This document shows positions 43,201 through 64,000 of a DNA stretch of 64,000 bases, piece by piece; position 1 is the first letter of the stretch, and each line of letters begins with the position of its first letter. Under the pieces are notes generated by a model. The model had not been told where the DNA came from. It searched no databases and saw only the letters and a list, made by a program, of their open reading frames with translations. Position numbers and translations under genes: made by a program. This DNA comes from Basidiobolus meristosporus CBS 931.73 (lineage: Eukaryota; Fungi; Basidiobolomycota). Location of the stretch: contig MCFE01000241.1 in NCBI GenBank assembly GCA_002104905.1, forward strand, positions 54,262 to 118,261, written 5' to 3'.

Positions 43201-46200
43201 GAAAAGTTCCCTCTTGACCCATTTAGCAAGAAACAGGGTGCCCGCATGTACAGGACTGGGGATCTTGTCCGATACTTGTCTGATGGCAGTATCATCTTCC
43301 TGGGTCGTAACGATGACCAAGTCAAGATCCGTGGATTCAGAATTGAGCTTGGTGAGGTTGAGGCACGTCTTGTTGACCATCCCCTCGTGAAGGAAGCAGC
43401 GGTGCTAGCCCTCGGCAATGGTACGGATAAGCGCCTGGTTGCCTATGTGGTCGCTGAGCAGAGCGAAGGTCTCGCTCATTTGCTGCATTCTCATGTTGCC
43501 GAGAAATTGCCGGACTACATGACACCAACAGCATATGTTCGCATGGACAGACTTCCACTGACAGCTAATGGCAAACTCGACCGTCGCGCACTTCCCGAGC
43601 CGGATAGAGACTCCCTTGTCAGTCAGACATACGAAGCCCCTGTGGGCGAGACGGAAACTGCCTTGGCACGCATCTGGGAGGAACTGCTCAACATCAAACA
43701 AGTTGGGCGCCATGACAACTTCTTCATGCTTGGTGGTCACTCTCTACTCGCTGTTCAGCTGATTGAGCGCCTTCATCACAATGGGCTGGGTCTGTCAATT
43801 CGTGCACTGTTTGAGACACCGACCTTGAGTGTACTTGCCCAATCTCTTAATTTAGACCCTATTGCAGTAGCAGCGGCGGCAGAAGCACCATCAAACCTCA
43901 TTATGCCTGACACTACTCAAATTACCCCGGAAATGCTACCACTCATCGACTTGACTCAGTGGGAAATCGACCATATCGTCAATCAAGTCGAAGGAGGAGT
44001 AAGTAATATCCAGGATATCTACGCTCTCACTCCATTGCAAGATGGTATGCTCTTCCATCACATCATGGCAACCAAGGGCGATCCTTACCTTATATATGTT
44101 ATCATGAATTTTGATAACAAAGCTATACTCGATCGCTACTTGGATGCTGTGCAGAAGGTAGTTGATCGCCACGATGTCTTACGAACGGGCATCATGTGGG
44201 AAGGTCTATCCAACCCTGCTCAGGTTGTATTGCGCCACGCGACACCCTTAGTTACCGAACTTGCATTGAACTCAGCAGATGGTCCAATTACCGAGCAACT
44301 CATAAGGCGCATTGATCCTCGTGAGCATCGTATAGACTTGACCCAAGCTCCATTGACTCGTTTCATCATTGCCCAGGATGCTGATGGTCGTTGGGTAGCT
44401 GCTCAATTGCTACACCATACGATTGGTGATCACTCCACTTTTGAAGAAATGAACCACGAAATTGAGGCATTCCTTGGAGGCCGAGGAGGTTTGCTGCCAG
44501 CACCATCTTCATTCCGTAATCTCATTGCACAAACACGCGCAGGACCAAGCGTAGAAGAACATGAGCAGTTTTTTACCAAGATGCTTAGCGGGATTGAGAC
44601 ACCTGCGTTACCGTTTGGACTTTCGGATGTTCATGGTGACGGTTTGAACATCACCGAAAACTACCGTTTGTTGCCTCAAAACCTGAATAATCGCCTGCGC
44701 AGCCTTGCCAAATCGCTGGGAGTCAGTCTTGCGAGTTTGTGTCATCTTGCATGGGCTGGGGTGGTTGCACGAACCAGCGGTCAACAACAAGTTGTGTTTG
44801 GTACTGTGCTCCTGGGACGTATGCAGGCTGGATCAGTGATAGATCGCGCAATGGGTTTGTTCATCAACACATTACCCATACGCATAGATATGGAGAATTC
44901 CAGTGTTGAAGATACTCTCCGCCAAACCCAAATTAGTTTGGCAGCCCTGCTTGAGTATGAGCATGCATCATTGGCAGTGGCACAGCAATGTAGTAGCGTT
45001 CCAGCCGGCATTCCACTTTTCAGTGCCGTGCTGAATTATCGCCATAACAACAAAAAACTCGCAGAAACCACAAAAATGGAGGGGGTAGAGTTCGGCCATG
45101 AACAGGAACGCACGAACTATCCATTCTTAATGAACGTTGAGGATTCTGGGGACTCTTTAGGCTTGACTGCCCAGATCATTCAGTCATTTGATTCGGCTCA
45201 CATCAACGAGTACATGCAGCAAGCGTTGCAAAATCTGGCCGATGCGTTAGAGTTCACCCCGAAGATGCCAGTTAACGAACTTGAAATAATGCCAGTGGAC
45301 GAGCGCAACCTGTTGCTTCATTCGTGGAACACAACTGACGAAATCTACCCGGACCAGTTGTGTATCCATCATCTCTTTGAGCAGCAGGTCTCTCGATCCC
45401 CCGATGCTGTGGCTATTGTGTATGAATCCGTAACCCTGACCTATGCTGAGGTCAACGCATGCGCCAATCGCCTGGCGCATCACCTCATCGCCGTTGGAGT
45501 CAGACCTGACACTCTTGTGGCGATCTGTGTGGAGCGCAGCCCGGCCATGGTCGTAGGCCTGCTGGCGATCCTGAAAGCCGGTGGTGCCTACGTTCCACTC
45601 GATCCAGTGTATGCAAGTGAGCGCCTTGGCCACATCCTCAAGGATGCGGCACCCATTGCTCTGCTTGCCGATGCAGCAGGCTGTGCCGCACTTGGCAAGG
45701 CTGCTATTGCTTCATTGACTGTGATTGACCCGAATGAAGTACCTGATTTGCCAGCCACCAACCCGCATATCCTTGACCTTACCTCCGAGCATCTTGCTTA
45801 TCTGATCTACACCTCTGGCTCCACTGGTACACCCAAGGGTGTAATGATTCCTCACAGCGGCGCGTGCAACTACTTGCACTGGGCAGTGCAAACGTACGCA
45901 CCTAAGCAAGGCTCTGTGGTATCATCATCACTCTCCTTCGACGCGACCGTTACCAGCTTGTGGACCCCGCTTCTTTATGGTAGCACTGTGACACTACTGA
46001 AGTCAGGCGATGAAATGGTGGCACTGGAAGCCTACGTGCGCCAAGCACAGGGTGAGGGCTTGCTGAAGATCACCCCAGCCCACCTTGACCTGATGGGTCG
46101 ACGCCTACAGGCAGATGGAGCGAAAACGCGAGTGGATACGTTCGTAGTTGGTGGAGAAGCGCTGAGTCCTTCGACAGTAGCACTTTGGCGCAGCATTCAG

Positions 46201-49200
46201 CCTGGTGTGCGGATAGTCAACGAGTATGGACCCACAGAAACAGTGGTCGGGTGTTCCGTCTACGACATGAGCACACCACTGGACCAGGCCATCAATGTCC
46301 CCATTGGCCGTCCTATTGCCAACACCCGACTTTACCTATTGGACTCGCACGGGAAGCCGGTACCACTCGGGGCTGTCGGTGAGCTTCATATCGGTGGAGC
46401 TGGTGTCGCACGCGGCTATTTAAACCGCCCCGACTTGACCGCCGAGCGATTCCTACCCGATCCATTCAGCGATAAAGAAGGTTGTCGCATGTACAAGACC
46501 GGAGACCTGGCTCGCTACCTGCCAGATGGCAACTTGGAATATCTAGGCCGTAACGACCACCAAATCAAGATCCGTGGATTCCGAATCGAGCCTGGTGAGA
46601 TTGAGGCTCGTCTCGTCGATCATCCTCTCGTCAAGGAAGCAGCAGTGCTAGCCCTGGGCGAGGGCACCGAGAAACGTTTAGTTGCATATGTGGTTGCTGA
46701 GCACAAGGAGGGCCTTGCTCATTTGCTCCGCACTCATGTTGCTGAGAAGCTGCCCGATTACATGACACCAGCAGCATTTGTTCGCCTGGATGAACTGCCG
46801 TTAACTCCAAATGGCAAGCTCGACCGTCGGGCACTTCCAGAGCCAGACAGCAGCTCTCTCGTCAGCCAGAAATACGAGGCACCAGTGGGCGAGATCGAGA
46901 TCGCCCTGGCTGCCATCTGGGAGGAGCTCCTTAGTATCGAACGAGTCGGTCGTCACGATAACTTCTTCATGCTTGGTGGCCACTCCTTACTTGCCGTGCG
47001 TTTGATGAATCGGGTCTCTGTTCTCGGTATACAGCTTCAGTTGACTTCACTATTCGCCTCACCAATATTGTCTGATCTTGCGAATGTGATTACTAAGCAG
47101 CTATCTCAAGAGGAGCAGGTGTTTGATAGTATCATGCCGGTATCTCGAGGAGCCGCTCTAATGCCATCTTTTGCTCAGCAACGTTTGTGGTTCCTAGCCC
47201 AAATGGAAGATGTCAGCGACATCTATCACATGCCAATGGCGCTCCGCCTGCGCGGTACTCTCGATCGATATGCATTGCAAGGCGCTTTAAATACCATATT
47301 TTCTAGACATGAGTCACTTCGCTCTGTCTTCGTAACCATTGAAGGCCAACCTCAGGTCCAAATCTTAAGCTCTGACTCTGGAATACCCATGCGTGTTCTT
47401 GAGCTTCAGGGCAAGCAAGATTTGGATAGATACGTTCGTGATTTGAGTGTGAATGAGGCTCATGCATCTTTTGACCTTGAACAAGGACCATTGATTCGTG
47501 CACAGTTGATCCAACTTGCTCACGATGATCATGTCTTCTTGCTAACACAGCATCATATTGTCTCGGATGGTTGGTCAATGGGACTGTTGACTCGTGAGCT
47601 GAGTGACCTCTACACAGCATTCCATAATGGTCTACCCGACCCATTAGCCCCACTTACCCTCCAGTACCCCGACTATGCCGCCTGGCAGAGAAAGTGGCTC
47701 AGCGGTGATAGGCTCCAGGAACAAAGCGAGTTCTGGCGCAATGCACTCGCCGGGGCACCTGTGTCAATCACCCTGCCAACTGACCGGCCTCGTCCTTCTC
47801 GGCAATCGTTTGCAGGAGCCCGGATGCCAATTCGTGTGGACTCGCACACAACATTGGCCCTTAAGCGCCTCAGTCAGCAGAATGGAGCAACATTGTTCAT
47901 GACTATCCTGGCAGCATGGAGTGCTGTGCTGTCGCGACTCTCAGGACAAGATGATATAATGATTGGCACACCAAGCGCCAATCGCAACCATCGCGCGATC
48001 GAGCAATTGATCGGATTCTTTGTAAACACCCTGGTTCTTCGCGTTGATCTTTCCGGTAATCCAAGCGGGTTGGAGCTACTGGAGCGTGTCCGTCAATTTG
48101 CAGTGGCTGCCCAAGCTCATCAGGATCTGCCGTTTGACCAAGTGGTGGAGATTACGAAGCCGCCTCGTAGAATGGATCAGACCCCACTCTTCCAAGTGAT
48201 GTTTGCTTGGCAAAATAATGACGAAGGTGAAGTACATCTACCGGGAATAGTGATGTCACCAGCCGAAGTGACCTATGATATTGTCAAGTTTGACCTGGAC
48301 CTTGAGCTGTACGAAGAGAATGACGAGATTATCGGCCATCTTGGGTACTCGACTGCCCTCTTTGAGCAATCCACCATCGAGAGACATATCGGATATTTGC
48401 AAACCATGTTGCAAGCTATAGCCACCGATGCCGGGCAGTCTGTCTCATCAGTGAATCTACTTTCTTCGTCAGAGCAAGAGCTTTTGCTTCATACATGGAG
48501 TACTACCGACAAACCATATCCCGACCATTTATGTATCCATCATCTCTTTGAGGAGCATGTTATTAGCTCTCCCGACTCTGTTGCCGTTGTGTATGAGTCT
48601 CAGTCACTGACCTATGCTGAGGTCAACGAGCGTGCCAATCGCCTCGCCCATCATCTCATTGAGCTCGGAGTTAAACCCGACAGCCTTGTTGCGATCTGCT
48701 TGGAGCGAGGTCCAGCTCTGGTAGTGGGATTACTTGCGATCCTGAAAGCAGGTGGTGCATATGTCCCTCTGGATCCGTCATATGCTAGCGACAGACTAAG
48801 GGACATAATCAGCGATGCTCAACCGGGTATCTTAATAGCCGATACTGTTGGTCAAACAGCACTTGGTGCTAGTGTACTCTCTTCGGTAACTTTATTGGAC
48901 CCACACACTTACTCAGACTATCCCTCCACCAATCCCGATGTCCCCGAGTTAAATTCACACCATCTTGCCTATGTAATTTACACCTCTGGCTCTACTGGTA
49001 AACCCAAGGGCGTCATGGTCGAGCATGAAGGGTTTGTAAACCTTATCAGAACAAGACCGGATGTCTATGGTATCAGACCCTCCAGTCAGGTTATGCAGTT
49101 CTTCTCTTTCAGCTTTGATGGTGGTGCCTTAGAAACCTTTATGGCCATTGGATTGGGTGCTAGCCTACATATGCTACCGGATTATATCCGACTTGATAGA

Positions 49201-52200
49201 GGACTTTTGTGGAATTATTTGGAAAGGAATTCGATCACACAAACCATTTTGACGCCAGCTGTGTTACAAGACTGTAAAGCATTGCCTCCTTTGACCACAT
49301 CGTTGACCCTTGTCATGGCCGGCGAAGCGCTCCCGGCAACACTGCTCCGTACACTTCAGCGATTAATTCCCAACGGTAGAATTATTAACGATTACGGGCC
49401 GACCGAGGCAACTGTCAGTGCTATAGCGTGGAAGTGTCCTCCAAATTTCTCAGACGATATTGTTCCAATCGGTCGCGCGATTACAAACAAGCGAGTCTAC
49501 CTTCTGGATGCTTTTGGACAACCTGTACCATTAGGAGCAGTAGGTGAAATGTATATTGGAGGAGTAGGAGTGGCAAGAGGCTATCTCAATAGACCTGAAT
49601 TGACCGCACAGAGTTTCTTGGCTGATCCATTCAGCGATAAAGAAGGTTGCCGCATGTACAAGACCGGAGACCTGGCTCGCTACCTGCCAGATGGCAACTT
49701 GGAATATCTGGGCCGTAACGACCACCAAATCAAGATCCGTGGATTCCGAATCGAGCCTGGTGAGATTGAGGCTCGTCTCGTCGATCATCCTCTCGTCAAG
49801 GAAGCAGCAGTGCTAGCCCTGGGCGAGGGCACCGAGAAACGTTTAGTTGCATATGTGGTTGCTGAGCACAAGGAAGGCCTTGCTCATTTGCTCCGCACTC
49901 ATGTTGCTGAGAAGCTGCCCGATTACATGACACCAGCAGCATTTGTTCGCCTGGATGAACTGCCGTTAACTCCAAATGGCAAGCTCGACCGTCGGGCACT
50001 TCCAGAGCCAGACAGCGGCTCTCTCGTCAGCCAGAAATACGAGGCACCAGTGGGCGAGATCGAGACCGCCCTGGCTGCCATCTGGGAGGAGCTCCTTAAT
50101 ATCGAACGAGTCGGTCGTCACGATAACTTCTTCATGCTTGGTGGTCATTCCCTACTCGCTGTACAGCTGATTGAACGTCTTCGTCGCGTTGATCTTGGTT
50201 TATCTGTTCGCGCCCTGTTCGAGACCCCTACTTTGAGTGTTTTAGCCGAATCTCTTAATGGAGACCAAGTAGCCATCACCTCTACTCTAGCAGTACCTCC
50301 GAACCTTATTAAACCCGGCACCACCACGATCACTCCAGAAATGCTGCCGCTTATCAACTTGACCCAGAATGACATCGATCACATTGCAAATCACGTCAAA
50401 GGTGGAGTAAGTAATATCCAAGATATCTATGCTCTGGCTCCATTACAAGACGGCATGCTGTTCCATCATATCATGGCCACCAAAGGTGATCCTTATTTAC
50501 TTTATGTTATCATGGCCTTTGATAACATAACTATACTCGATCGCTACCTAAATGCTGTGCAGAAGGTGGTTGACCGCCATGATATTTTGCGCACTGGTAT
50601 TATGTGGGAAGGTCTATCAAGCCCTGCTCAAGTTGTATTACGTCAGGCGACTCTATCTGTTACTGAGCTACCTCTTAACCCAGCAGACGGTCCTATTATT
50701 GAGCAACTCGCAAAGCGCGTGGATCCTCGAGAACATTCCATTGACTTGACCCAAGCTCCATTGACTCGTTTCATCATTGCCCAAGAGGGTAATGGCCGTT
50801 GGATCGCAGCCCAATTGCTGCATCACACTATTGGTGACCACTCCACACTTGAGGAAATGAATCGTGAAATTGAGACTTTCCTTAAAGGCCCAGAAGAAAC
50901 TTTGCCTGCGCCTTCCTCCTTCCGTAATCTGATTGCCCAAACACGCAAAGGACCTAGTGTTGAAGCACATGAACGTTTCTTTACGGAAATGCTTGCGGAG
51001 ATTGAAACACCAGCATTGCCTTTTGGATTATCTGATGTTCACGGTAATGGTGGAAATATCACCCAGTCCTACCGCTTGCTGCCACAGAGTCTGAACAACC
51101 GTCTTCGTAGTCAAGCTAAGTCGATGGGCGTTAGTCTTGCTACTATGTGCCACCTTGCTTGGGCCCAGGTAATTGCTCGAACTAGTGGACAGCAGCAAGT
51201 TGTGCTTGGTACGGTGCTATTTGGACGTATGCATGCGGGATCTGGCGCAGATCGCGCAATGGGACTATTCATCAACACGCTACCGATTCGCATAGACATG
51301 AAAAATGCTAGTGTGCAGGATACTGTGCACCAAACTCAGACCAGTTTAGCAGCGTTGCTTGAATATGAACATGCATCCTTGGCACTGGCGCAACGGTGCA
51401 GTAATGTTCCAGCCGGTATTCCGCTCTTCAGTGCCCTTTTGAACTATCGCCATAACAGCACTCAACTGGACACTGAGACTACCATATTGGAAGGTGTTGA
51501 ATTCCTTCAAGAACAAGAGCGCACTAACTATCCATTCTTAATGAATGTAGAAGACTTTGGGGACTCACTTGGCTTGACCGCTCAAATTGTTCAGCCTTAC
51601 GATTCGAATCGCATCATCAATTATATGCAGCAAGCCTTACAGAGCATAGCCGATGCGTTGGAGTTCACGCCCATGATGCCAATTAATGAGCTCGATGTCT
51701 TGCCTATAGATGAACGCAACTTGGTACTTGATACATGGAACATCACCGATGGCCCATATCCAGACCATTTATGCGTCCATCAACTATTCGAGGAACAGGT
51801 CTCTCGTTCCCCGAACGCCATCGCTGTTGTGTCGGAATCTCAGACACTGACCTATGCTGAGGTCAACGAGCGTGCCAATCGCCTCGCCCATCATCTCATT
51901 GAGCTCGGAGTCAAGCCTGACACCCTTGTTGCACTCTGCGTAGAGCGTTCCGTTGCAATCGTCATTGGAATACTGGCCATCTTGAAGGCTGGTGGCGCTT
52001 ACTTGCCACTGGACCCGGTGTATGCTAGTGAACGACTCAACGATATTGTTTCCGATGCGTCGCCCTCCATTCTCTTGGCGGACGAGCATGGTGGCAACAC
52101 TATTGGTGAAGCATCACTCGCTTCACTGACGGTGGTCGACCCCAATGCGCAGTTCGAAGAACACCCCGCCACCAACCCACAAGTCACCAGCCTGACCTCG

Positions 52201-55200
52201 CATCACCTTGCCTACGTCATCTACACCTCTGGATCCACTGGAAAGCCTAAGGGTGTGATGGTGGAGCACGCACAGGTCACTCGCCTGTTTGATGCAACGG
52301 CCGCCTGGTACCAGTTCAACGAAAACGATGTCTGGTGCCTGCTGCACTCGTACAGCTTCGATTTCTCCGTGTGGGAGTTGTGGGGTGCTCTGCGATATGG
52401 TGGTAAGTTGGTGCTCCCATCCCACCATGTCACTCGTTCCTCCGAGGACCTCTATGAACTGATCTGTGAGCAAGGCATCACCGTGCTGAACCTTACCCCG
52501 AGCGCCTTCAAGCCGCTGATTGCGTGCCACGCGCAAAGTGAGCTCCAGGACCAATTGCGCTACGTGATCTTCGGAGGGGAGGCCCTCGAGCCGGCCATCC
52601 TGCAGCCATGGTACGCCACCCGATCTGAACACTCCCCCAAGATCGTGAACATGTATGGCATCACGGAGACCACAGTCCATGTCACCTACCGTGTGATGAA
52701 GAAGACGGACTGCACACAGGCGATTAGTCCCATTGGTGCAAGAATCCCTGATCTGACCACGTACATCCTGGACACTCGCGGCAATCCCGTGCCTATGGGA
52801 GTGGTTGGCGAGCTGTACATCGGAGGTGCTGGTGTCACCCGTGGATACCTGAACCGACCAGAGCTGACAGCTGAACGGTTCCCACTTGACCCATTCAGCA
52901 AGACGCCAGGTGCTCGCATGTACCGGACTGGTGACCTCGGTCGCTACCAAAGTGATGGCAGCCTCATCTTTTTGGGTCGTAACGATCATCAAGTCAAGAT
53001 CCGCGGTTTCCGTATTGAACTCGGGGAGATTGAGGCTCGTCTTGTTGATCACCCACTGGTCAAAGAAGCAGCGGTACTTGCAGTCGGTGACGACTCTGAC
53101 AAGCGTCTAGTTGCATATGTTGTTGCTGCACACGAGGAGGAACTTGCGCATTTGCTTCGCTCTCATGTGGCAGAAAAACTACCTGATTACATGACCCCAG
53201 CAGCGTTTGTTCGTATGGATAAATTTCCGCTAACGGCGAATGGTAAGCTCGACCGTCGTGCCCTTCCAGAGCCCGATAGCGACTCTCTCGTCAGCCAGAA
53301 ATACGAGGCACCTGTGGGTGAGATCGAAACTGCACTAGCGAGTATTTGGGAGGAGCAACTCAACGTCACTCGAGTCGGGCGTCATGACAACTACTTTATG
53401 CTTGGTGGACATTCTCTGCTTGCTGTACAGCTGATTGAACGCCTTCGTCGTATTGGACTTGGTTTGTCTATCCGTGCTTTGTTTGACACTCCTACCTTAA
53501 GCGTACTCGCCCAATCTATTAATCATGACAATGTAGCTGTAGCAGCAGCAGCAGCCACGCCATCCAACCTTATTAATCCTGACACCACCGAAATATTCCC
53601 AGCAATGCTTCCTCTGATCGATCTGACCCAGAGTGACATTGATCATATTGTCAATCAGGTTGAAGGAGGCGTTAGTAATATTCAAGATATCTATGCCCTG
53701 GCTCCATTACAGGATGGCATGCTGTTCCATCATATCATGTCGACTAAGGGTGATCCGTACCTGCTCATCAGTGCTATTGCCTTCGATAGCAGAGCGGTAC
53801 TCAATGAATACCTGAGTGCTGTGCAGAAGGTGATCGATCGTCACGACATCTTGCGCACGAGCATTATGTGGGAAGGCCTTTCCACTCCTGCTCAGGTTGT
53901 GTTGCGCCACGCGACTTTGTCCTTCACCGAGCTGTCGCTCAACTCATCCGATGGCCCTATTGTGGAGCAACTGAAGCAACGGTTCGATCCTCGGGAACAT
54001 CGTATGGATTTAACTCGAGCCCCTTTGTTGCGTTATGTGGCTGCCCAGGATGATGATGGTAGATGGATAGTGATTGAATTGATGCATCACATCATTGATG
54101 ACAATACTTCAGTGCAGCTAATGTACATGGAGATCCAAGCATTCATGGATGGTGAAGGTGACTCACTACCATCACCACAACCGTTCCGTAACCTCATTGC
54201 ACAAGCTCGTGCAGGACCCAATGTCGAGGCACATGAGCGTTTCTTCACCCAGATGCTTGGCGAAATCGACACGCCAGCCTTGCCTTTTGGGCTGTCAGAT
54301 GTGCACGGTGAGGGCCTAGATATCACTGAAACCCAACTATGGCTACCACAAGATTTGAACAAACGCCTTCGTAGCCAAGCTAGATCCATGGGTGTTAGTC
54401 TTGCCAGCTTATGCCATCTGGCTTGGGCACAGGTGATTGCTAGAACTAGTGGACAGCAACAAGTAGTGTTTGGCACCGTGCTCTTCGGACGTATGAATGC
54501 CGGCTCAGGCCTAAAGAGTACAATGGGTCCGTTCATCAATACCTTACCACTTCGCATTGGCATGGACGCCAGCAGTATTCTCGATACTGTGCGAAAGACT
54601 CACGCCACTCTAGCCGCTTTGATGGAGCATGAATACGCATCATTAACGCTGGCACAAAGGTGCAGTAGTGTCCCCTCAGGCACCCCAATGTTTAGTGCAC
54701 TTTTGAACTACCGTCATAATATGCAAGTATCCAATGAGGATACAAGAATTGCTGGCATTGAACACTTGGAAGGGCAAGAGCGCACTAATTATCCATTCGT
54801 CATGTCTGTAGAAGACTTTGGGGACACACTCGGAGTAACTGCTCAGGTCGTACAGCCATATGATTCAGTACGCATTGCAGAGTACATGAAGCAAGCCTTA
54901 CAAAACCTGGCAAGTGCTTTGGAGTGCTCACCTACAATGGCCGCTCAAGAATTGGAAGTCTTGGCTATAGAGGAGCGTAACCTGTTGCTTCATTTATGGA
55001 ATACAGCTGACGAAGCCTATCCCAACCAATTATGTATCCATCAATTGTTTGAGGATCAAGTTGTTCGCTCTCCCGATGCCATCGCTATTGTGTCGGAGTC
55101 TCAGACATTGACTTATACTCAAGTCAACGAGCGTGCTAATCGCCTCGCACATCGCCTCATTGATCTTGGAGTCAAACCGGATACTCTTGTTGCTCTCTGC

Positions 55201-58200
55201 GTTGAGCGATCCCCGGCGATTGTGATCGGTATACTGGCCATCATGAAGGCCGGTGGTGCCTACTTGCCACTGGATCCAGTGTATGCTAGTGAACGACTGA
55301 ACGATATTATTTCCGATGCGTCGCCCTCCATTCTCTTGGCGGATAAGCATGGTCGCAATACTATTGGCGAGGAATCACTCGCTTCGCTAACTGTGATCGA
55401 TCCCAACGCAGAGTTGGAGAGCTGCCCCTCTGCAAACCCACAGGTCTCTAGCCTGACCTTGGACAATCTCATCTATATCATCTACACCTCTGGATCCACC
55501 GGCAAGCCAAAGGGCGTGATGGTGAAGCATGCCCACGTCACCCGCCTGTTTGATACGACGGCTCCCTGGTACCAGTTCAACCAAAAGGATGTCTGGTGCT
55601 TGTCTCACTCCTACAGCTTTGACGTATCCGTGTGGGAGCTATGGGGAGCACTTCGCTACGGCGGAAAGCTGGTTGTCCCTAGCCAGAACGTGATCCGCTC
55701 GCCTGAAGATATGTACCGCTTGATCTGCGAGCAAGAAATCACCGTTCTGAATATGACTCCAAGCTCCTTCAAGCCGCTGATTGGTTGCCAAGCGCAGAGT
55801 GAACTCAGTGATCGGCTGCGCTTTGTGATCCTTGCTGGTGAAGCGCTGGAGCCAGCTATTTTGCAACCGTGGTACGCCACGCGCTCCGAGGATTCACCCA
55901 AAATAGTGAACATGTATGGGCCCACCGAAATCACCGTGTACGCCACCTATCGCGTGATGAAGGCACAGGATTGCTCCCAAGCCGTCAGTCCCATTGGTGT
56001 CAGGCTTCCGGATCTGACCACCTATATTCTGGATGCTCAGGGTCGCCCTGTGCCTTTGGGTGCTGTTGGGGAGCTGTGTATTGGTGGTGCCGGCGTCACT
56101 TGCGGATATCTTCACCGGCCAGAGCTGACGGCCGAAAAGTTCCCTCTTGACCCATTTAGCAAGAAACAGGGTGCCCGCATGTACAGGACTGGGGATCTTG
56201 TCCGATACTTGTCTGATGGCAGTATCATCTTCCTGGGTCGTAACGATGACCAAGTCAAGATCCGTGGATTCAGAATTGAGCTTGGTGAGGTTGAGGCACG
56301 TCTTGTTGACCATCCCCTCGTGAAGGAAGCAGCGGTGCTAGCCCTCGGCAATGGTACGGATAAGCGCCTGGTTGCCTATGTGGTCGCTGAGCAGAGCGAA
56401 GGCCTCGCTCATTTGCTGCATTCTCATGTTGCCGAGAAATTGCCGGACTACATGACACCAACAGCATATGTTCGCATGGACAGACTTCCACTGACAGCTA
56501 ATGGCAAACTCGACCGTCGCGCACTTCCCGAGCCGGATAGAGACTCCCTTGTCAGTCAGACATACGAAGCCCCTGTGGGCGAGACGGAAACTGCCTTGGC
56601 ACGCATCTGGGAGGAACTGCTCAACATCAAACAAGTTGGGCGCCATGACAACTTCTTCATGCTTGGTGGTCACTCTCTACTCGCTGTTCAGCTGATCGAA
56701 CGTCTCCGTCGCATTGGCCTTGGGTTGTCTGTTCGTGCCTTGTTCGACACCCCTACGCTGAGTGTAATTGCCCAATCTCTCAACCGTGACCGTGTTGCTG
56801 TAGCAGCTTCGGCAGTGGCACCACCAAACCTCATCACACCTGACACCACCGAGATCACCCCGGAGATGCTTCCACTGATCGACTTGACTCAGGACGACAT
56901 TGATCATATTGTCAACCAGGTTGAAGGAGGGGTTAGCAATATTCAAGACATTTATGCTCTGGCTCCATTACAAGACGGTATGCTGTTCCATCATATCATG
57001 CTCACTAAGGGTGATCCTTACGTGATCAATGTGATCATGGCTTTTGACAACAGAGCTATACTCGATCGCTACTTGGATGCTGTGCAGAAGGTGGTGGATC
57101 GCCATGATATCTTGCGTACTGGGATTATGTGGGAAGGCTTATCCACGCCTGCTCAAGTTGTACTACGTCACGCGACTCTCTCGGTCACTGAGCTTGTATT
57201 GAACCCAGCTGATGGCTCAATTGTTGAGCAACTCACAAAGCGCGTGGACCCTCGAGAGCACCGTATCGACTTGACCCAAGCTCCATTGACCCGTTTCATC
57301 ACTGCTCAGGATATTGATGGACGTTGGGTAGCTGCTCAATTGCTACACCATACGATTGGTGATCACTCCACCCTCGAAGAAATGAATTATGAAATTGAGT
57401 CGTTCCTTGGGGGTAGAGGGGAGACACTACCTGTCCCTTCACCTTTCCGCAACCTCATCGCCCAGGCGCGTGCGGGACCTGGTGTCGAGGAACAAGAACG
57501 ATTCTTCACAAAAATGCTTGGAGAGATTGACACACCTGCCTTGCCTTTTGGACTGACAGATGTTCACGGGAATGGCTTCAATTTAACCGATTGCTACATA
57601 TCACTGCCACAAGACTTAAATGATAGCCTTCGTAATCACGCCAAGAAGCTGGGGGTCAGTCTTGCAAGTATGTGTCACCTGGCTTGGGCGCAGGTGATTT
57701 CCCGAACCAGCGGACAACAGAGAGTAGTGTTTGGCACGGTGCTCTTTGGGCGTATGCAGGCTGGATCCGGTGCAGATCACGCAATGGGATTGTTTATTAA
57801 TACACTTCCAATTCGTATTGACATGGAAAATATCAGCGTCCAAGAATCTATCCTCCAGACCCAAGCCTCTTTAGCCGCCTTGATGGATCATGAGCATGCA
57901 TCTTTGGCACTAGCCCAGAGATGTAGTAGTGTTCCCTCTGGCACTCCAATGTTCAGCGCCCTTTTGAACTACCGTCACAATAAGCAAGTAGCTGGCGGGG
58001 ACGCAAAAATCGATGGTATCGAGTATCTTGATGGGCAAGAGCGTACCAACTATCCATTCACTATGTCTGTAGAAGATGGAGGAGTATCATTGGGATTAAC
58101 TGCTCAAGCTGTTCGCCCATATGATTCGTCTCGCATTTGTAACTACATGCAGCAGGCTCTACAGAGTCTAGATGAGGCTTTGAATCATGCACCGAACACA

Positions 58201-61200
58201 TCAGTCGGAGACCTTGAGATCTTGCCTACGGATGAACGCCACTTATTAATTCAATCGTGGAATGATACTGATAAGCCTTGTCCTCATCACATACGTGTTC
58301 ACCAGCTGTTTGAGAATCAGGTGGACCAAACTCCAGATGCCATCGCCGTTGTCTACAGAGATCAGGCTTTGACTTTCCGGGAACTGAATGCACGCGCTAA
58401 CTGGTATGCGCAGCAGCTTAAGGCACTTGGTATCCAACCGGGAGACTTTATTGCTACCCTACTGAAGAGATCCACTGAGCTGATTGTCATGCAAATTGCG
58501 ATTCTCAAGGTCGGAGCTGCCTACGTTCCGATCGATCCGAAGGCACCTGCCGATCGTCAAGCATTTATTATTGACGATTGTGCAGCACGGCTGTTGGTTA
58601 CCACCGAAAATACTCAAATCCCATCCGTGCTTAATACACCGCTGCTTCGTTTAAGTGACAACCCGGATAGTACAGACATAATTATCGATGCTCCGAATGT
58701 GATCTCTAGTGGTTCCAGCGTAGCCATCGCATATGCAATGTACACTTCTGGCTCCACAGGAATTCCCAAAGGCGTGCTTGTACCACATCGAGCAATCGTA
58801 CGCCTGACTATCAACAACGGTTATGCGAACGTTGGACCGGACGATCGTGTCGCGTTTGCTGCCAATCCTGCATTTGATGCAAGTACATTTGAAATCTGGG
58901 CGCCACTGCTCAATGGCGGCCAAGTGGTGATTATTGATGCGGACACGTTTACGGACTCGGTCCTAATGGCAGAAGCGATTGATAGACATCACATCACTAC
59001 TCTCTTCCTGACAACAGTGCTTTTCAATCAATTCGTCTTATCTATGGGTTCGACCTTGGCTAAGCTGAGATATCTTCTCTGTGGAGGAGAGCAAGAAAGC
59101 CTAGAGTCTTTCGCCACTCTTCTGAAATACGGAGGGCCTGAGCACCTCATCCATTGCTATGGACCTACCGAGACCACAACGTTTGCCACTACGTATGAGG
59201 TAACGAGTATTGATCACATACAAGGTCGCTTGCCTATCGGTCGGCCTATTTCCAAAACAAGTGTCTATGTATTAGATCAACATGGTCATCCAGTGCCATT
59301 AGGGGTTGTGGGAGAGCTTTACATTGGTGGTACAGGAGTTGCAAATGGCTACCTCAACCGAGCTGACCTATCAGCAGAACGCTTCCTTCCTGATCCGTTC
59401 AGTACGTGCGAGGGGAATCGTATGTACAGAACAGGCGATTTGGTGCGCTTCTTACCCGATGGTAATTTAGTATTTGTAAGCCGTAACGATCATCAAGTCA
59501 AAATCCGTGGATTCCGTATTGAACTCGGCGAAATTGAAGCTCGTCTTATTGAGCACCCTCTTGTTAACGAAGTAGCAGTACTTGCGATCGGCAATGGTGC
59601 GGATAAGCGCCTGGTTGCCTATGTGGTCGCTGAGCAGAGCGAAGGCCTCGCTCATTTGCTGCATTCTCATGTTGCCGAGAAATTGCCGGACTACATGACA
59701 CCAACAGCATATGTTCGCATGGACAGACTTCCACTGACAGCTAATGGCAAACTCGACCGTCGCGCACTTCCCGAGCCGGATAGAGACTCCCTTGTCAGTC
59801 AGACATACGAAGCCCCTGTGGGCGAGACGGAAACTGCCTTGGCACGCATCTGGGAGGAACTGCTCAACATCAAACAAGTTGGGCGCCATGACAACTTCTT
59901 CATGCTTGGTGGTCACTCTCTACTCGCTGTTCAGCTGATCGAACGTCTCCGTCGCATTGGCCTTGGGTTGTCTGTTCGTGCCTTGTTCGACACCCCTACG
60001 CTGAGTGTAATTGCCCAATCTCTCAACCGTGACCGTGTTGCTGTAGCAGCTTCAGCAGTGGCACCACCGAACCTCATCACACCTGACACCACCGAGATCA
60101 CCCCGGAGATGCTTCCACTGATCGACTTGACTCAGGACGACATTGATCATATTGTCAACCAGGTTGAAGGAGGGGTTAGCAATATTCAAGACATTTATGC
60201 TCTGGCTCCATTACAAGACGGTATGCTGTTCCATCATATCATGGCGACCAAAGGCGATCCTTACCTGATCTTCGGTATCATGGCCTTTGCGGATAAGCAT
60301 ATTCTCACTCGATACTTGGATGCTGTGCAGAAGGTGGTGGATCGCCATGATATCTTGCGTACTGGGATTATGTGGGAAGGCTTATCCACGCCTGCTCAAG
60401 TTGTACTACGTCACGCGACTCTCTCGGTCACTGAGCTTGTATTGAACCCAGCTGATGGCTCAATTGTTGAGCAACTCACAAAGCGCGTGGACCCTCGAGA
60501 GCACCGTATCGACTTGACCCAAGCTCCATTGACCCGTTTCATCACTGCTCAGGATATTGATGGTCGCTGGATAGCTGCTCATCTCCTACATCATGCCATT
60601 GGTGATCACTCTGCCGCCGATGAAATGAACCATGAAATCGAGGCGATCCTGGATGGTCGAGCAGACCTGCTCCCGGCACCATCCTCTTTCCGTAATCTCA
60701 TTGCACAAGCACGAGTAGGACATAGTGTTGAGGCACACGAGCGTTTCTTCACTGAGATGCTTTCCGAGATAGAAACGCCAGCATTGCCTTTTGGGTTGTC
60801 CGATGTTCATGGTAACGGTCACAATATCACTGAGGCCTACTGTTTACTACCCCAGGGCCTGAACAACCGCCTTCGTAGTCAAGCCAAGTCGATGGGCGTT
60901 AGTCTTGCTAGTATATGCCATCTTGCATGGGCTCAGGTAATTGCCCGAACTAGTGGACAGCAGCAAGTTGTGTTTGGTACGGTGCTCTTTGGACGTATGC
61001 AGGCTGGATCTGGTGCAGATCGTGCCATGGGATTGTACATCAACACGCTACCGATTCGTATCGATGTAGATAACGCCAGTGTTCAGGATACAGTGCGTCA
61101 GACCCAAGCCTCATTAGCAGCCTTGATGGATCATGAGCACGCATCCCTGGCACTAGCCCAGAGATGTAGTAGTGTTCCCTCTGGTATCCCCATGTTCAGC

Positions 61201-64000
61201 GCACTTTTGAACTATCGCCACAATAAGCAAGAACCGACTAACGATACAGGAATCCCTGGTATCGAATACATTGAAGGGCAAGAGCGTACCAATTATCCAT
61301 TCTTAATGTCCGTAGAAGATAATGGAACCTCGCTTGGGGTCACGGCTCAAATTGTCCAGCCTTACGATTCGAATCGCATCATCAATTATATGCAGCAAGC
61401 CTTACAGAGCATAGCTGATGCGTTGGAGTTCACGCCCATGATGCCAATTAATGAGCTCGATGTCTTGCCTATAGATGAACGCAACTTGGTACTTGATACA
61501 TGGAACATCACCGATGGCCCATATCCAGACCATTTATGCGTCCATCAACTATTCGAGGAACAGGTCTCTCGTTCCCCGAACGCCATCGCTGTTGTGTCGG
61601 AATCTCAGACACTGACCTATTCTGAGGTCAACGAGCGTGCCAATCGCCTCGCCCATCATCTCATTGAGCTCGGAGTCAAGCCTGACACCCTTGTTGCACT
61701 CTGCGTAGAGCGTTCCGTTGCAATCGTCATTGGAATACTGGCCATCTTGAAGGCTGGTGGCGCTTATTTGCCACTGGACCCGGTGTATGCTAGTGAACGA
61801 CTCAACGATATTGTTTCCGATGCGTCGCCCTCCATTCTCTTGGCGGACGAGCATGGTAGCAACACTATTGGTGAAGCATCACTCGCTTCACTGACGGTGG
61901 TCGACCCCAATGCGCAGTTCGAAGAACACCCGCCACCAACCCACAAGTCACCAGCCTGACCTCGCATCACCTTGCTTACGTCATCTACACCTCTGGATCC
62001 ACTGGAAAGCCTAAGGGTGTGATGGTGGAGCACGCACAGGTCACTCGCCTGTTTGATGCAACGGCCGCCTGGTACCAGTTCAACGAAAACGATGTCTGGT
62101 GCCTGCTGCACTCGTACAGCTTCGATTTCTCCGTGTGGGAGCTGTGGGGTGCTCTGCGATATGGTGGTAAGTTGGTGCTCCCATCCCACCATGTCACTCG
62201 TTCCTCCGAGGACCTCTATGAACTGATCTGTGAGCAAGGCATCACCGTGCTGAACCTTACCCCGAGCGCCTTTCAAGCCGCTGATTGCGTGCCACGCGCA
62301 AAGTGAGCTCCAGGACCAATTGCGCTACGTGATCTTCGGAGGGGAGGCCCTCGAGCCGGCCATCCTGCAGCCATGGTACGCCACCCGATCTGAACACTCC
62401 CCCAAGATCGTGAACATGTATGGCATCACGGAGACCACAGTCCATGTCACTTACCGTGTGATGAAGAAGACGGACTGCACACAGGTGATTAGTCCCATTG
62501 GTTCAAGAATCCCTGATCTGACCACGTACATCCTGGACACCCGCGGCAATCCTGTGCCTATGGGAGTGGTTGGCGAGCTGTACATCGGAGGTGCTGGTGT
62601 CACCCGTGGATACCTGAACCGACCAGAGCTGACAGCTGAGCGGTTCCCACTTGACCCATTCAGCAAGACGCCAGGTGCTCGCATGTACCGGACTGGTGAC
62701 CTCGGTCGCTACCAAAGTGATGGCAGCCTCATCTTTTTGGTCGTAACGACCACCAAGTCAAGATCCGCGGTTTCCGTATTGAACTCGGGGAGATTGAGGC
62801 TCGTCTTGTTGATCACCCACTGGTCAAAGAAGCAGCGGTACTTGCAGTCGGTGACGACTCTGACAAGCGTCTAGTTGCATATGTTGTTGCTGCACACGAG
62901 GAGGAACTTGCGCATTTGCTTCGCTCTCATGTGGCAGAAAAACTACCTGATTACATGATCCCAACGGCATTTGTTCGCATGGACAAACTTCCACTGACTG
63001 CAAATGGCAAACTCGACCGTCGGGCACTTCCAGAGCCCGATAGTGACTCTCTCGTCAGCCAGAAATACGAGGCACCAGTGGGCGAGATCGAGACCGCCCT
63101 GGCTGCCATCTGGGAAGAGTTGCTCCAGATCAATAGAGTAGGACGTCATGACAACTTCTTCATGCTCGGTGGCCATTCCCTACTCGCTGTACAGCTGATT
63201 GAACGCCTTCGTCGCATTGGACTCGTTCTACCTATTCGTGCTCTATTCAATACTCCTACTTTGAGCATACTAGCTCAATCTCTCAATTGTGACCGTATAT
63301 CTGTTGCAGCAGCATCAATGATACCTCCAAATCTTATTAAGCACGAAACCACCGAAATAACTCCGGAAATGCTTCCACTCATTGATTTGACTCAGAGTGA
63401 TATTGATCGTATCGTCAGCCAGGTCGAAGGAGGTGTTAGTAATATTCAAGATATCTACGCCCTGGCTCCATTGCAGGATGGCATGCTATTCCATCACATC
63501 ATGTCGACTAAGGGTGACCCGTATTTGCTCATCAGTGCACTTGCCTTCGATAGCAGAGCTGTCCTCGATCGTTACCTTGGCGCTGTGCAAAAGGTGGTAG
63601 ATCGCCATGAATCTTGCGCACGGGCATTATGTGGGAAGGTCTTTCCACCCCTGCTCAGGTTGTATTGCGCCATGCAACTTTGTCCTTCACCGAGCTGTCG
63701 CTCAACTCATCCGATGGCTCTATTGTGGAGCAACTGAAGCAACGGTTCGATCCCCGCGAGCATAGCATCGACTTGACCCAGGCACCGTTGTTACGTTATG
63801 TGGCTGCCCAGGATGATGATGGCAGATGGATAGTGATTCAACTGATGCATCACATCATTGATGACAATACTTCAGTGCAGCTAATGTACATGGAGATCCA
63901 AGCATTCATGGATGGTGAAGGTGACTCACTACCATCACCACAACCGTTCCGTAACCTCATTGCACAAGCTCGTGCAGGACCCAATGTCGAGGCACATGAG
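40298..64000 (+). CDS. Giant multimodular NRPS (>=8 modules, bacterial-type with dual E/C domains); proposed exons 40298-40333, 40426-40517, 40578-beyond window end
   Basis: 7121-aa ORF 40594-61959 with repeated C (HHxxxD), A ([47 protein letters not shown]) and T (FF.LGGHSL) motifs. Homologous sequence continues through four single-base indels to 64000. No TE or reductase domain within the window. The NRPS call is near certain; the spliced 5' exons are a prediction. Confidence 0.95.
40334..40425 (+). other. Predicted spliceosomal intron 1 (92 nt)
   Basis: CAG|GTAAGG ... CCTAAC (40398-40403) ... TTTTGCTAG|; phase 0; keeps ATG 40298 in frame with exon 2. Confidence 0.72.
40518..40577 (+). other. 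Predicted spliceosomal intron 2 (60 nt)
   Basis: AAG|GTAGGG ... GCTAAT (40561-40566) ... TATCAG|; phase 2; AG+T forms Ser and runs E-F-D-A-P into the ATG at 40594. Confidence 0.72.
40744..43850 (+). other. NRPS module 1: C(LCL-type, HHIVTDG) - A1 (code DVWNIAMVYK) - T1
   Basis: PSYAQKRLW...HHIVTDGWS; code read by aligning to the Thr-type A4; GGHS serine at 43741. Confidence 0.85.
44000..47100 (+). other. NRPS module 2: dual E/C (HHIMATKGD; HHTIGD) - A2 (DATKVGEVGK, Asn-type) - T2
   Basis: The N-terminal HH[I/L]xxxxGD motif marks dual epimerisation/condensation domains; the code resembles Asn codes DLTK[L/I]GEVGK. Confidence 0.82.
47160..50260 (+). other. NRPS module 3: C(LCL, HHIVSDG) - A3 (DGLIVADVSK, substrate unresolved) - T3
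   Basis: [11 protein letters not shown]...[10 protein letters not shown]; no N-terminal HH motif. Confidence 0.85.
50420..53520 (+). other. NRPS module 4: dual E/C (HHTIGD) - A4 (DFWNIGMVHK, Thr) - T4
   Basis: FDFSVWE, TVLNLTP, YVIFGGE and [13 protein letters not shown] give the canonical Thr code. Confidence 0.9.
53680..56790 (+). other. NRPS module 5: variant dual E/C (HHIMSTKGD; active site HHIIDD) - A5 (near-identical to A1) - T5
   Basis: HHIIDDNTS at 54085-54111; A5 matches A1 at offset 12933 with only a handful of substitutions. Confidence 0.88.
56950..60030 (+). other. NRPS module 6: dual E/C (HHTIGD) - A6 (DAFFLGCTFK, Ile/Val-type) - T6
   Basis: FDASTFE, TLFLTT, YLLCGGE and [12 protein letters not shown]; resembles Ile codes such as DAFFLGVTFK/DAMFLGCTYK. 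Confidence 0.82.
60190..63290 (+). other. NRPS module 7: dual E/C (HHAIGD) - A7 (Thr, near-identical to A4, three indels) - T7
   Basis: 61345-62958 matches 51580-53194; indels at 61929-31, 62271-73 and 62739-40. Confidence 0.85.
63450..64000 (+). other. NRPS module 8, N-terminal part of variant dual E/C (HHIMSTKGD; HHIIDD), truncated by the window end
   Basis: Paralogue of C5; one 1-bp deletion at ~63610; open frame to 64000. Confidence 0.85.

What the first reader, a model, noticed from the sequence alone, without database searches (positions are those of the whole stretch)
54085..54111. HHIIDD variant C domains occur only after the Thr modules: candidate Thr-dehydrating (Dhb-forming) condensation domains
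Seen: active sites are HHTIGD (C2, C4, C6), HHAIGD (C7) and HHIIDD (C5 at 54085; C8 at ~63848). Both HHIIDD domains directly follow an A domain with the canonical Thr code, and no other module has this motif; they also diverge elsewhere ([27 protein letters not shown]). Known: dehydrobutyrine in syringomycin/syringopeptin/tolaasin-type and malpinin peptides arises at Thr-loading modules, and some C-domain clades catalyse dehydration. Inferred: C5 and C8 convert Thr to Dhb rather than to D-allo-Thr. The two domains are paralogues, so the 2/2 correlation is not independent evidence.
Basis: partly seen in the sequence, partly recalled or inferred. Interest (0 to 1): 0.82.

Follow-up and report, generated by a model that had tools for sequence, protein, structure and literature searches.

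The report
Thr-dehydrating condensation domains in fungal-type NRPS
A giant peptide-making enzyme gene carries variant coupling domains right after each threonine-loading module, and their active-site signature matches domains at known dehydro-amino-acid positions in bacterial and fungal peptides, so the peptide probably contains dehydrobutyrine.

Summary
HHIIDD is encoded at 54085 and 63848 and nowhere else in the window. Both copies sit in condensation (C) domains directly downstream of Thr-coded adenylation (A) domains (code DFWNIGMVHK).

C5 and C8 belong to the dual epimerisation/condensation (E/C) clade. Their active site reads HHxx[D/E]D[A/N]xS, where ordinary E/C domains read HHxxxDHx[A/T].

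The same signature marks known dehydro positions elsewhere:
- Dhb9 and Dhb14 of syringopeptin, but not aThr15.
- Dha12 and Dhb17 of medipeptin-type peptins.
- Dhb5 of malpinin (MalA "C*").
- HHxxDDx was already noted for the Dha-forming solanimycin domains.

In 120 homologous NRPSs, the acidic variant follows a Thr/Ser module in 18 of 22 cases, against 20 of 378 for other E/C domains. Phylogenetically independent pairs agree about 8 to 0.

- The C* domains are not one clade.
- The 61.9-64 kb tail has four 1-bp frame breaks in this assembly. Read-derived contigs from four runs lack them.
- A second gene model shows ten modules, a TE domain and a third C* after a third Thr module.

This is a new member of a known kind. 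Interest is moderate.

The parts
40594..61959 (+). Intron-free NRPS reading frame (7121 aa). It holds modules 1-6 plus C7 and the start of A7. Its 'stop' at 61959 is created by a 1-bp indel.
51772..53319 (+). A4, adenylation domain with Thr code DFWNIGMVHK.
53401..53418 (+). T4 carrier-domain LGGHSL motif. The phosphopantetheine Ser is at residue 4274.
53608..54984 (+). C5*, an E/C-clade condensation domain and candidate dehydrating/condensing domain.
53728..53754 (+). N-terminal second His motif of C5 (HHIMSTKGD), the hallmark of dual E/C domains.
54085..54111 (+). Active-site motif HHIIDDNTS of C5. It has D at the 5th position, N after the invariant Asp, and S two residues further on.
61537..63085 (+). 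A7, a Thr-coded adenylation domain. Its core is about 99% DNA-identical to A4. In this assembly it is interrupted by three of the four 1-bp frame breaks.
63372..64000 (+). C8* (first 210 residues; it runs off the window). It is 86% identical to C5. One frame break lies at about 63611.
63848..63865 (+). HHIIDD motif of C8.
61928..61929 (+). Frame break 1, a 1-bp indel in a C run. It is absent from read-derived contigs.
62271..62271 (+). Frame break 2, a 1-bp indel in a T run. It is absent from read-derived contigs.
62738..62739 (+). Frame break 3, a 1-bp indel in a G run. It is absent from read-derived contigs of all four runs.
63610..63611 (+). Frame break 4, a 1-bp indel. It is absent from read-derived contigs of all four runs.
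43936..45312 (+). C2, an ordinary dual E/C domain (HHTIGDH), used as an internal comparator.
50344..51723 (+). C4, an ordinary dual E/C domain (HHTIGDH).
56869..58245 (+). C6, an ordinary dual E/C domain (HHTIGDH).
60112..61488 (+). C7, an ordinary dual E/C domain (HHAIGDH).

Best explanation
C5 and C8 are members of the dual epimerisation/condensation clade that have been converted into dual dehydration/condensation ('C*') domains. So is a third copy, C10, which lies beyond the window.

Proposed mechanism (all steps inferred):
1. Each C* receives a peptidyl-L-Thr thioester from the upstream carrier domain.
2. It removes the alpha-proton, as an E/C domain does.
3. Instead of re-protonating from the other face, it eliminates the beta-hydroxyl, giving peptidyl-Dhb.
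4. It then condenses this with the next aminoacyl thioester.

The sequence correlate has three parts. An Asp or Glu sits at the 5th position of HHxxxD. The His that normally follows the invariant Asp is lost (N here, A in Pseudomonas). A Ser lies two residues further on.

The whole enzyme is a 10-module, TE-terminated, bacterial-like NRPS of the Mortierellaceae type. Its predicted product is a decapeptide with Dhb at positions 4, 7 and 9.

Shown here: the domain order, the motifs, the clade, and the correlation with known Dhb/Dha positions in other enzymes. Inferred: the chemistry in this enzyme and the catalytic roles of the three residues.
For: 1. Each HHIIDDN domain follows a Thr-coded A domain, and no other domain has the motif. 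This is 3 of 3 when the second gene model P0043 is included. P0043 is 100% identical to the window over long stretches and continues to a TE domain.
2. E/C-clade membership: the N-terminal HHIMSTKGD motif, the tree position among the enzyme's own E/C domains, and 68-74% identity to them.
3. Calibration on known products:
   - SypB: Ala-Val-Val-Thr->HHLVDDA-Ala, which is Dhb9.
   - SypC: Val-Ala-Ala-Thr->HHLVDDA, Thr->HHLALDH, which is Dhb14-aThr15 of SP22 (sequence and colinearity from PMC3039948).
   - P. mediterranea locus: Ile-Ser->HHLVDDA-Ala-Ala-Ala-Val, which is Ile11-Dha12-Ala-Ala-Ala-Val16 of medipeptin B.
   - Pseudomonas L076: Val-Thr->HHMVDDA, Thr->HHMALDH, Ala, Dab, which is the peptin tail Val-Dhb-aThr-Ala-Dab.
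   - The MalA orthologue has HHLVEDN after its Thr module, exactly where MalA's C* is drawn.
   - The solanimycin dual-clade domains are reported as HHxxDDx (PMC10204066).
4. Statistics: among E/C-type domains the counts are 18/22 against 20/378, Fisher p about 3e-17. About 8 phylogenetically independent pairs go the same way and 0 the other way, p about 0.008, on a tree built without the motif columns. In the replication set of 79 bacterial loci the counts are 2/2 against 10/129.
5. Co-varying positions that were not used to define the class: A/N instead of H, and Ser at +8 from the first His in 18/23 against 20/404.
6. The gene is intact through module 7 and C8 in read-derived contigs of 4 runs from 3 studies.
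Against: - There is no chemistry for this organism. No RNA run was found, so expression is unknown.
- The calibration strains are not the chemically characterised strains. Assignments rest on colinearity.
- The signature is imperfect. Three C*-like domains keep His after the Asp. One Gryganskiella HHIIDDN domain follows an A domain coded DVWNIAMVHK, whose substrate is unknown. One Lysobacter HHLVDDH domain follows a non-hydroxy code. One Xanthomonas protein has HHLVDDA after Leu-coded modules, though those are 100% identical copies.
- Pseudomonas sp. B21-028 (P0004) has two consecutive Thr modules followed by ordinary motifs. Its product is unknown.
- Catalytic roles of the three residues are untested. 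Side-chain geometry could not be examined because the tools give no coordinates.
- I could not read Wheadon & Townsend 2021, which may already describe this.
Confidence: 0.72

Rival explanations
1. C5, C8 and C10 are condensation domains whose epimerisation function is dead. The loss of the His after the invariant Asp simply leaves L-Thr in the peptide, with no dehydration.
For: - Epimerisation-inactive E/C-type domains are common in Pseudomonas, and A or N at that position is a known minority variant (PMC10531924).
- HHL[VI]NDA domains follow Leu-coded modules in SypA-like proteins. H->A alone is therefore not tied to hydroxy amino acids.
Against: The acidic 5th residue, not H->A/N alone, tracks Thr/Ser. 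It sits exactly at the Dhb/Dha positions of four characterised peptide families.
Confidence: 0.1
2. They are ordinary dual E/C domains, and the product carries D-allo-Thr at these positions. On this reading the motif change is neutral drift shared by paralogues.
For: - They keep the N-terminal HH motif and both active-site His residues.
- C5, C8 and C10 are paralogues.
Against: - In SypC and in the peptin tail, the domain after the allo-Thr module has the ordinary motif. The domain after the Dhb module has the acidic one.
- The association recurs in about 8 independent contrasts.
Confidence: 0.07
3. The signature marks donor-site adaptation to a dehydro (planar) residue. The dehydration itself is done by another enzyme, or occurs spontaneously on the thioester.
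For: - No biochemical proof exists for E/C-clade C* domains. MalA's assignment is by analogy.
- In solanimycin a separate enoyl-hydratase-like protein was considered.
Against: - No lanthipeptide-type dehydratase homologue is present in the M. alpina genomes (PMC9365243).
- The changed residues lie inside the catalytic HHxxxD loop, not at the tunnel entrance.
Confidence: 0.07
4. In this strain the gene is a decaying pseudogene truncated after C7, so C8 is not made at all.
For: There are four frame-breaking 1-bp indels within 1.7 kb of the tail and none in the preceding 21 kb. The gene model had to bridge them with false introns.
Against: - All four are absent from read-derived contigs of every run that covers them, including the best holder.
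- Three of them lie in homopolymer runs.
- The second gene model, P0043, reads through.
- There is no excess of stops otherwise.
Confidence: 0.04

Closest known systems
MalA module-6 'C*' dual dehydration/condensation domain (malpinin synthetase, Mortierella alpina; PMC9365243)
   Same: - It is in the E/C clade and has the N-terminal HH motif.
- It lies directly after the Thr module.
- It has an acidic 5th motif residue and N after the Asp (HHLVEDN against HHIIDDN).
- It comes from the same bacterial-like Mortierellaceae NRPS lineage.
   Different: - It is only 57-58% identical.
- It has E rather than D.
- MalA has 7 modules and one C*. This enzyme has 10 modules and three C*.
- The other A-domain codes differ, so the product is not a malpinin.
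C domains after the Dhb/Dha modules of Pseudomonas peptin synthetases (SypB/SypC syringopeptin; medipeptin/corpeptin type)
   Same: - They are in the dual E/C clade.
- They have HH[LM]VDDA with Ser at +8.
- They follow Thr or Ser modules whose residue is Dhb or Dha in the product.
- The neighbouring allo-Thr module is followed by an ordinary HHxxxDH domain.
   Different: - They are about 48% identical to C5.
- They have A instead of N after the Asp.
- They cluster with Pseudomonas E/C domains, not with C5.
Solanimycin SolF/SolG/SolH C domains (Dickeya solani; PMC10204066)
   Same: They are reported to fall in the dual clade and to carry HHxxDDx in place of HHxxxDG. They were proposed to dehydrate Ser to Dha.
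   Different: - They belong to an iterative single module in a PKS-NRPS hybrid.
- The substrate is Ser.
- Their sequences were not compared here.
CmodAA dehydrating C domains (AmbE C2, AlbB C2/C3, McyA, Crz1 C2)
   Same: They have the same proposed chemistry: beta-elimination on the carrier-bound donor before condensation.
   Different: - They form a separate clade.
- They keep a strict DG in the His motif and have a [K/R]SVLLAAH helix motif. C5 has DN and no such motif.
- C5 scores 69 bits against AmbE, compared with 170 bits against McyB and 141 bits against PvdL.
Canonical dual E/C domains (Balibar et al. 2005 type; this enzyme's own C2, C4, C6, C7)
   Same: They share the fold, the N-terminal HH[I/L]xxxxGD motif and both catalytic His residues, at 68-74% identity.
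   Different: They have HHxxxDHx[A/T]. The 5th residue is G, L or M rather than acidic. They follow non-hydroxy residues, or the Thr that becomes allo-Thr.

Membership tests
Dual E/C-clade condensation domains | [quoted passage not shown] | tested here: met
   HHIMSTKGD at residues 4379-4387 of the ORF. The consensus is quoted in PMC10531924.
Dual E/C-clade condensation domains | Active-site HHxxxD followed by H, or less often A or N, instead of G. | tested here: met
   HHIIDDN. A/N is described as a minority variant in PMC10531924.
Dual E/C-clade condensation domains | Clusters with E/C domains rather than with LCL or starter domains in a domain tree. | tested here: met
   C5 is sister to the enzyme's own E/C domains. 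It is 19-21% identical to C1, C3 and C9, and 68-74% identical to C2, C4, C6 and C7.
C* dual dehydration/condensation domains (MalA M6 type) | Lies immediately downstream of a Thr- or Ser-activating module. | tested here: met
   A4, A7 and A9 all have the code DFWNIGMVHK.
C* dual dehydration/condensation domains (MalA M6 type) | Shares the active-site signature of domains at proven Dhb/Dha positions: acidic 5th residue, A/N after the Asp, and Ser at +8. | tested here: met
   HHIIDDNTS compared with HHLVEDN (MalA orthologue) and HH[LM]VDDATS (Syp, medipeptin type). The signature was derived here. It is not a curated definition.
C* dual dehydration/condensation domains (MalA M6 type) | The product contains Dhb at the corresponding position. 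| not testable with these tools
   No product is known for this enzyme. A literature search found none.
C* dual dehydration/condensation domains (MalA M6 type) | No separate dehydratase in the pathway. | not tested
   Only DNA upstream of the gene is visible, and it holds retroelement debris. The downstream neighbourhood lies outside the window.
CmodAA dehydrating condensation domains | Strictly conserved DG in the His motif. | tested here: not met
   C5 has DN. The CmodAA rule comes from PMC11342130.
CmodAA dehydrating condensation domains | The [K/R]SVLLAAH helix motif before core motif C5. | tested here: not met
   Regex searches found nothing in C5. The corresponding stretch reads SLCHLAWAQ.
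CmodAA dehydrating condensation domains | Closest solved relatives are CmodAA domains. | tested here: not met
   AmbE 7r9x scores 69 bits and the McyA entry 8jbr scores 64 bits. McyB scores 170 bits and PvdL 141 bits.

The most novel reading that the evidence does not exclude
A small active-site switch may convert dual E/C domains from epimerases into beta-eliminases. The switch is an acidic residue at the 5th position of HHxxxD, loss of the following His, and Ser at +8.

On this reading it has arisen, or been retained against intragenic homogenisation, many times across Pseudomonas, Xanthomonas, Lysobacter, endofungal Burkholderiaceae and Mortierellaceae fungi. On a tree built without those columns there are at least 14 state changes.

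If true, Dhb/Dha against D-allo-Thr/D-Ser could be predicted from sequence alone and swapped by point mutation. This enzyme would then make an undescribed tri-Dhb decapeptide.
Probability: 0.4. Interest if true: 0.62.

Novelty: new member of a known kind. Interest (0 to 1): 0.45.

Why it matters
Structure prediction for Pseudomonas and Mortierella lipopeptides and oligopeptides currently cannot tell Dhb from D-allo-Thr using genome data. A-domain codes are identical for the two, and annotation tools call both kinds of downstream domain 'dual'.

The comparison made here gives a simple, testable rule. It also names three specific residues for a mutational switch experiment.

For this genome, the rule predicts an undescribed decapeptide with three dehydrobutyrines. 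The enzyme is a bacterial-like NRPS of the kind found in Mortierellaceae. The only characterised dehydropeptides of that group, the malpinins, are biosurfactants with nematicidal activity.

The finding also shows that the apparent truncation of the gene is an assembly artefact.

Tried and rejected
- Whole-domain phylogeny as a test for a dehydrating clade. It was rejected because C domains cluster by protein through concerted evolution. The acidic variants are scattered: the MRCA of C5 and the Syp Dhb domains spans 425 of 509 leaves. I used motif columns and independent contrasts instead.
- CmodAA membership. Rejected.
- Pseudogene reading of the tail. Rejected after laying contigs.
- The look-up of encoding contigs to see downstream DNA. 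P0043 was used instead.
- Wheadon & Townsend 2021 could not be read. I therefore cannot exclude that the signature is already described there.
- No structure was predicted. The tools return no coordinates, so the orientation of the three residues could not be measured.
- The protein is not 'open'.
- No RNA run holds the stretch, so expression could not be tested.
Full report
**What is in the window**

Bases 1-40,000 are AT-rich (GC 35-42% up to 38 kb, 46% at 38-40 kb) and almost free of ORFs. They hold fragments of LTR-retroelement genes: integrase core, integrase zinc-binding domain and a Copia-type gag domain.

From 40,594 a single frame of 7121 codons runs to 61,959 at about 50% GC. Pfam finds only Condensation, AMP-binding, AMP-binding_C and PP-binding domains.

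Core motifs and HMM envelopes give this order:
- C1 (HHIVTDG) - A1 (DVWNIAMVYK) - T
- C2 (HHTIGDH) - A2 (DATKVGEVGK, Asn-like) - T
- C3 (HHIVSDG) - A3 (DGLIVADVSK) - T
- C4 (HHTIGDH) - A4 (DFWNIGMVHK, the canonical Thr code) - T
- C5 (HHIIDDN) - A5 (same code as A1) - T
- C6 (HHTIGDH) - A6 (DAFFLGCTFK) - T
- C7 (HHAIGDH) - start of A7

C2, C4, C5, C6 and C7 all carry the N-terminal second His motif HHIMxTKGD. This motif defines dual E/C domains (consensus in PMC10531924). Substrate names for codes other than Thr, Ser and Asn are my own reading of Stachelhaus codes and are not tool results.

**The observation**

HHIIDD is encoded at 54085-54102 and 63848-63865 and nowhere else. None is expected by chance.

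The second copy lies past the ORF's stop. There the reading continues in other frames: A7 with the Thr-code residues, T7, and the first 210 residues of C8.

**The tail is not a pseudogene**

Bases 61,003-64,000 are 91% identical to 51,235-54,237. Relative to that paralogue the tail has four frame-breaking 1-bp indels, near 61,929, 62,271, 62,739 and 63,611. Three of them lie in homopolymer runs. The deposited gene model (P0001, 7764 aa) steps over them with four false mini-introns.

I laid contigs from four public runs, from three studies, on 61,500-64,000. Every run that covers a site differs from the window by exactly one base there. This removes all four frame breaks. They are therefore consensus errors of this assembly or, less likely, private to the isolate.

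I describe the sites only.

**The rest of the enzyme**

A second gene model, P0043, comes from a hidden source on a 25-kb contig. It is 100% identical to the window's protein over stretches of several hundred residues, and to the last 130 codons of the window.

It continues as C7 - A7(Thr) - T - C8 (HHIIDDN) - A8 (DGLIIADVSK) - T - C9 (HHIVSDG) - A9 (Thr) - T - C10 (HHIIDDN) - A10 (Asn-like) - T - TE. The enzyme therefore has ten modules and three HHIIDDN domains, each directly after a Thr module.

C5, C8 and C10 are 86-91% identical to each other and 68-74% identical to the enzyme's ordinary E/C domains. The A4 and A7 cores are about 99% identical in DNA, while the T and C parts are 74-88% identical.

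**Relatives**

I ran a word-index search with the C5 region against full-length NRPSs. It returned Mortierellaceae proteins (Mortierella, Gryganskiella, Benniella) and endofungal Burkholderiaceae (Mycoavidus, Mycetohabitans). It also returned Photorhabdus/Xenorhabdus, rhizobia and Pseudomonas peptin synthetases, and a few gall-midge proteins.

In a tree of 509 non-redundant C domains, C5 sits with the window's own E/C domains. Next come Mortierellaceae, then Mycoavidus. I infer a Mortierellaceae-type fungal host. The species is not given.

**Calibration on known products**

For all 655 C domains of the 120 hits I extracted the His motif, the N-terminal motif and the Stachelhaus code of the A domain immediately upstream. 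Five lines of evidence came out of this:

- Syringopeptin. [quoted passage not shown] A SypB protein reads Ala, Val, Val, Thr -> HHLVDDA, Ala, which is Dhb9. A SypC fragment reads Val, Ala, Ala, Thr -> HHLVDDA, Thr -> HHLALDH, which is Dhb14 followed by aThr15.
- Malpinin. The M. alpina protein P0011 has the architecture published for MalA. It shows HHLVEDN exactly at the position drawn as the C* dual dehydration/condensation domain after the Thr module.
- Medipeptin. A P. mediterranea locus reads Ile-like, Ser -> HHLVDDA, Ala, Ala, Ala, Val. This matches Ile11-Dha12-Ala-Ala-Ala-Val16 of medipeptin B (PMC8477016).
- Peptin tail. A further Pseudomonas locus reads Val, Thr -> HHMVDDA, Thr -> HHMALDH, Ala, Dab. 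This is the Val-Dhb-aThr-Ala-Dab tail.
- Solanimycin. The authors reported that its dual-clade C domains, proposed to make Dha, have HHxxDDx (PMC10204066).

**Statistics**

- Among E/C-type domains with a readable upstream code, an acidic 5th motif residue follows a Thr/Ser code in 18 of 22 cases. For other E/C domains the figure is 20 of 378 (odds ratio about 80, Fisher p about 3e-17).
- Relatedness inflates that figure, so I built a tree without the motif columns. On it the acidic state changes at least 14 times. In about 8 independent pairs the upstream Thr/Ser state changes the same way, in 0 the opposite way, and in about 3 not at all (sign test p about 0.008).
- Two further positions co-vary although they were not used to define the class. 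The residue after the invariant Asp is A or N in 19 of 23, against H in 379 of 404. The residue two further on is Ser in 18 of 23, against 20 of 404. C5 has all three features (HHIIDDNTS).
- In an independent sample of 79 bacterial loci, only 2 of 131 E/C domains were acidic. Both followed Ser or Thr, and none of 119 domains after other residues was acidic.

**Exceptions**

- One Xanthomonas protein has three HHLVDDA domains, two of them after Leu-coded modules. The three are 100% identical copies, so this is one event or an assembly collapse.
- One Lysobacter HHLVDDH domain follows a non-hydroxy code.
- One Gryganskiella HHIIDDN domain follows DVWNIAMVHK, a Thr-like code of unknown substrate.
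- HHL[VI]NDA domains follow Leu modules in SypA-like proteins. The acidic residue, not the H-to-A change alone, therefore carries the association.

**What it is not**

CmodAA domains are the biochemically proven dehydrating C domains (AmbE, AlbB). They keep a strict DG and have a [K/R]SVLLAAH motif (PMC11342130). C5 has neither. It also scores far lower against AmbE (69 bits) than against McyB (170 bits) or PvdL (141 bits) among solved structures.

C5, C8 and C10 are thus E/C-derived C* domains like MalA's. They are not CmodAA, and they are not a clade of their own.

**Mechanism**

This part is inferred. E/C domains deprotonate C-alpha of the donor thioester and re-protonate it from the other face (PMC9365243). 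In the C* variants the His that follows the invariant Asp is lost and a carboxylate appears in the catalytic loop.

The simplest reading is that re-protonation is suppressed and the beta-hydroxyl is expelled in an E1cB-type elimination. Condensation with the downstream aminoacyl thioester then follows. The predicted product is D-X1 - L-Asn2 - D-X3 - Dhb4 - D-X5 - D-(Ile/Val-like)6 - Dhb7 - L-X8 - Dhb9 - Asn10, released by the TE domain.

**Novelty and verdict**

C* domains of the dual clade are published for MalA. HHxxDDx has been remarked for solanimycin. Dhb after Thr modules is textbook for Pseudomonas peptins. This locus is therefore a new member of a known kind.

Three things may be new:
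- The general three-residue signature, and its recurrence across lineages.
- The clean Dhb-versus-allo-Thr contrast within single enzymes.
- The prediction of a tri-Dhb decapeptide from this fungus-type NRPS.

I could not read Wheadon & Townsend 2021, so the first point may already be known. Confidence is about 0.7 and interest is moderate.

Noticed in passing
window 61928-63611: Four 1-bp indels break the frame in this assembly only. The public gene model hides them as four false mini-introns (61866/61917, 62168/62266, 62745/62763, 63599/63659).
   Followed up: yes
window 51642-53140 vs 61410-62905: The A4 and A7 cores are about 99% identical in DNA, while the flanking T and C regions are 74-88% identical. 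This suggests recent gene conversion limited to the A domain.
   Followed up: partly
window 1-40000: This is an ORF-poor, AT-rich block with degenerate LTR-retroelement pieces: integrase core at 728-1249, integrase zinc-binding domain at 327-701, and a Copia-type gag DUF4219 at 35898-36413 (minus strand).
   Followed up: partly
P0016, P0091, P0099: Gall-midge (Contarinia nasturtii, Sitodiplosis mosellana) annotated proteins of 5-6.6 thousand residues are multi-module bacterial-type NRPSs with E/C domains. They are about 51-52% identical to C5. They could be horizontal transfers into insects or contamination.
   Followed up: no
P0052 (Xanthomonas cucurbitae), residues 1149-4847: Three HHLVDDA C domains are 100% identical to each other, two of them after Leu-coded modules. 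This is either very recent module duplication or repeat collapse in that assembly.
   Followed up: partly
P0061, P0063, P0064, P0072 (SypA-like Pseudomonas proteins): HHL[VI]NDA domains (N at the 5th position, A after the Asp) follow Leu-coded modules. They could be former C* domains that lost the carboxylate, or epimerisation-inactive E/C domains.
   Followed up: no
window 42100-43647 and 55033-56580 (A1, A5); P0059, P0008: The A-domain code DVWNIAM V[Y/H]K resembles the Thr code at 7 of 10 positions, and its substrate is unknown. In Gryganskiella the H variant is followed by an HHIIDDN domain. Here the Y variant is followed by ordinary E/C domains.
   Followed up: no
window 61976, 62451, 62486, 62503, 62541, 62553, 62750: The best-holding run differs from the window at these single bases, mostly T in the window against C in the contigs. 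This suggests further consensus errors or a different isolate.
   Followed up: no
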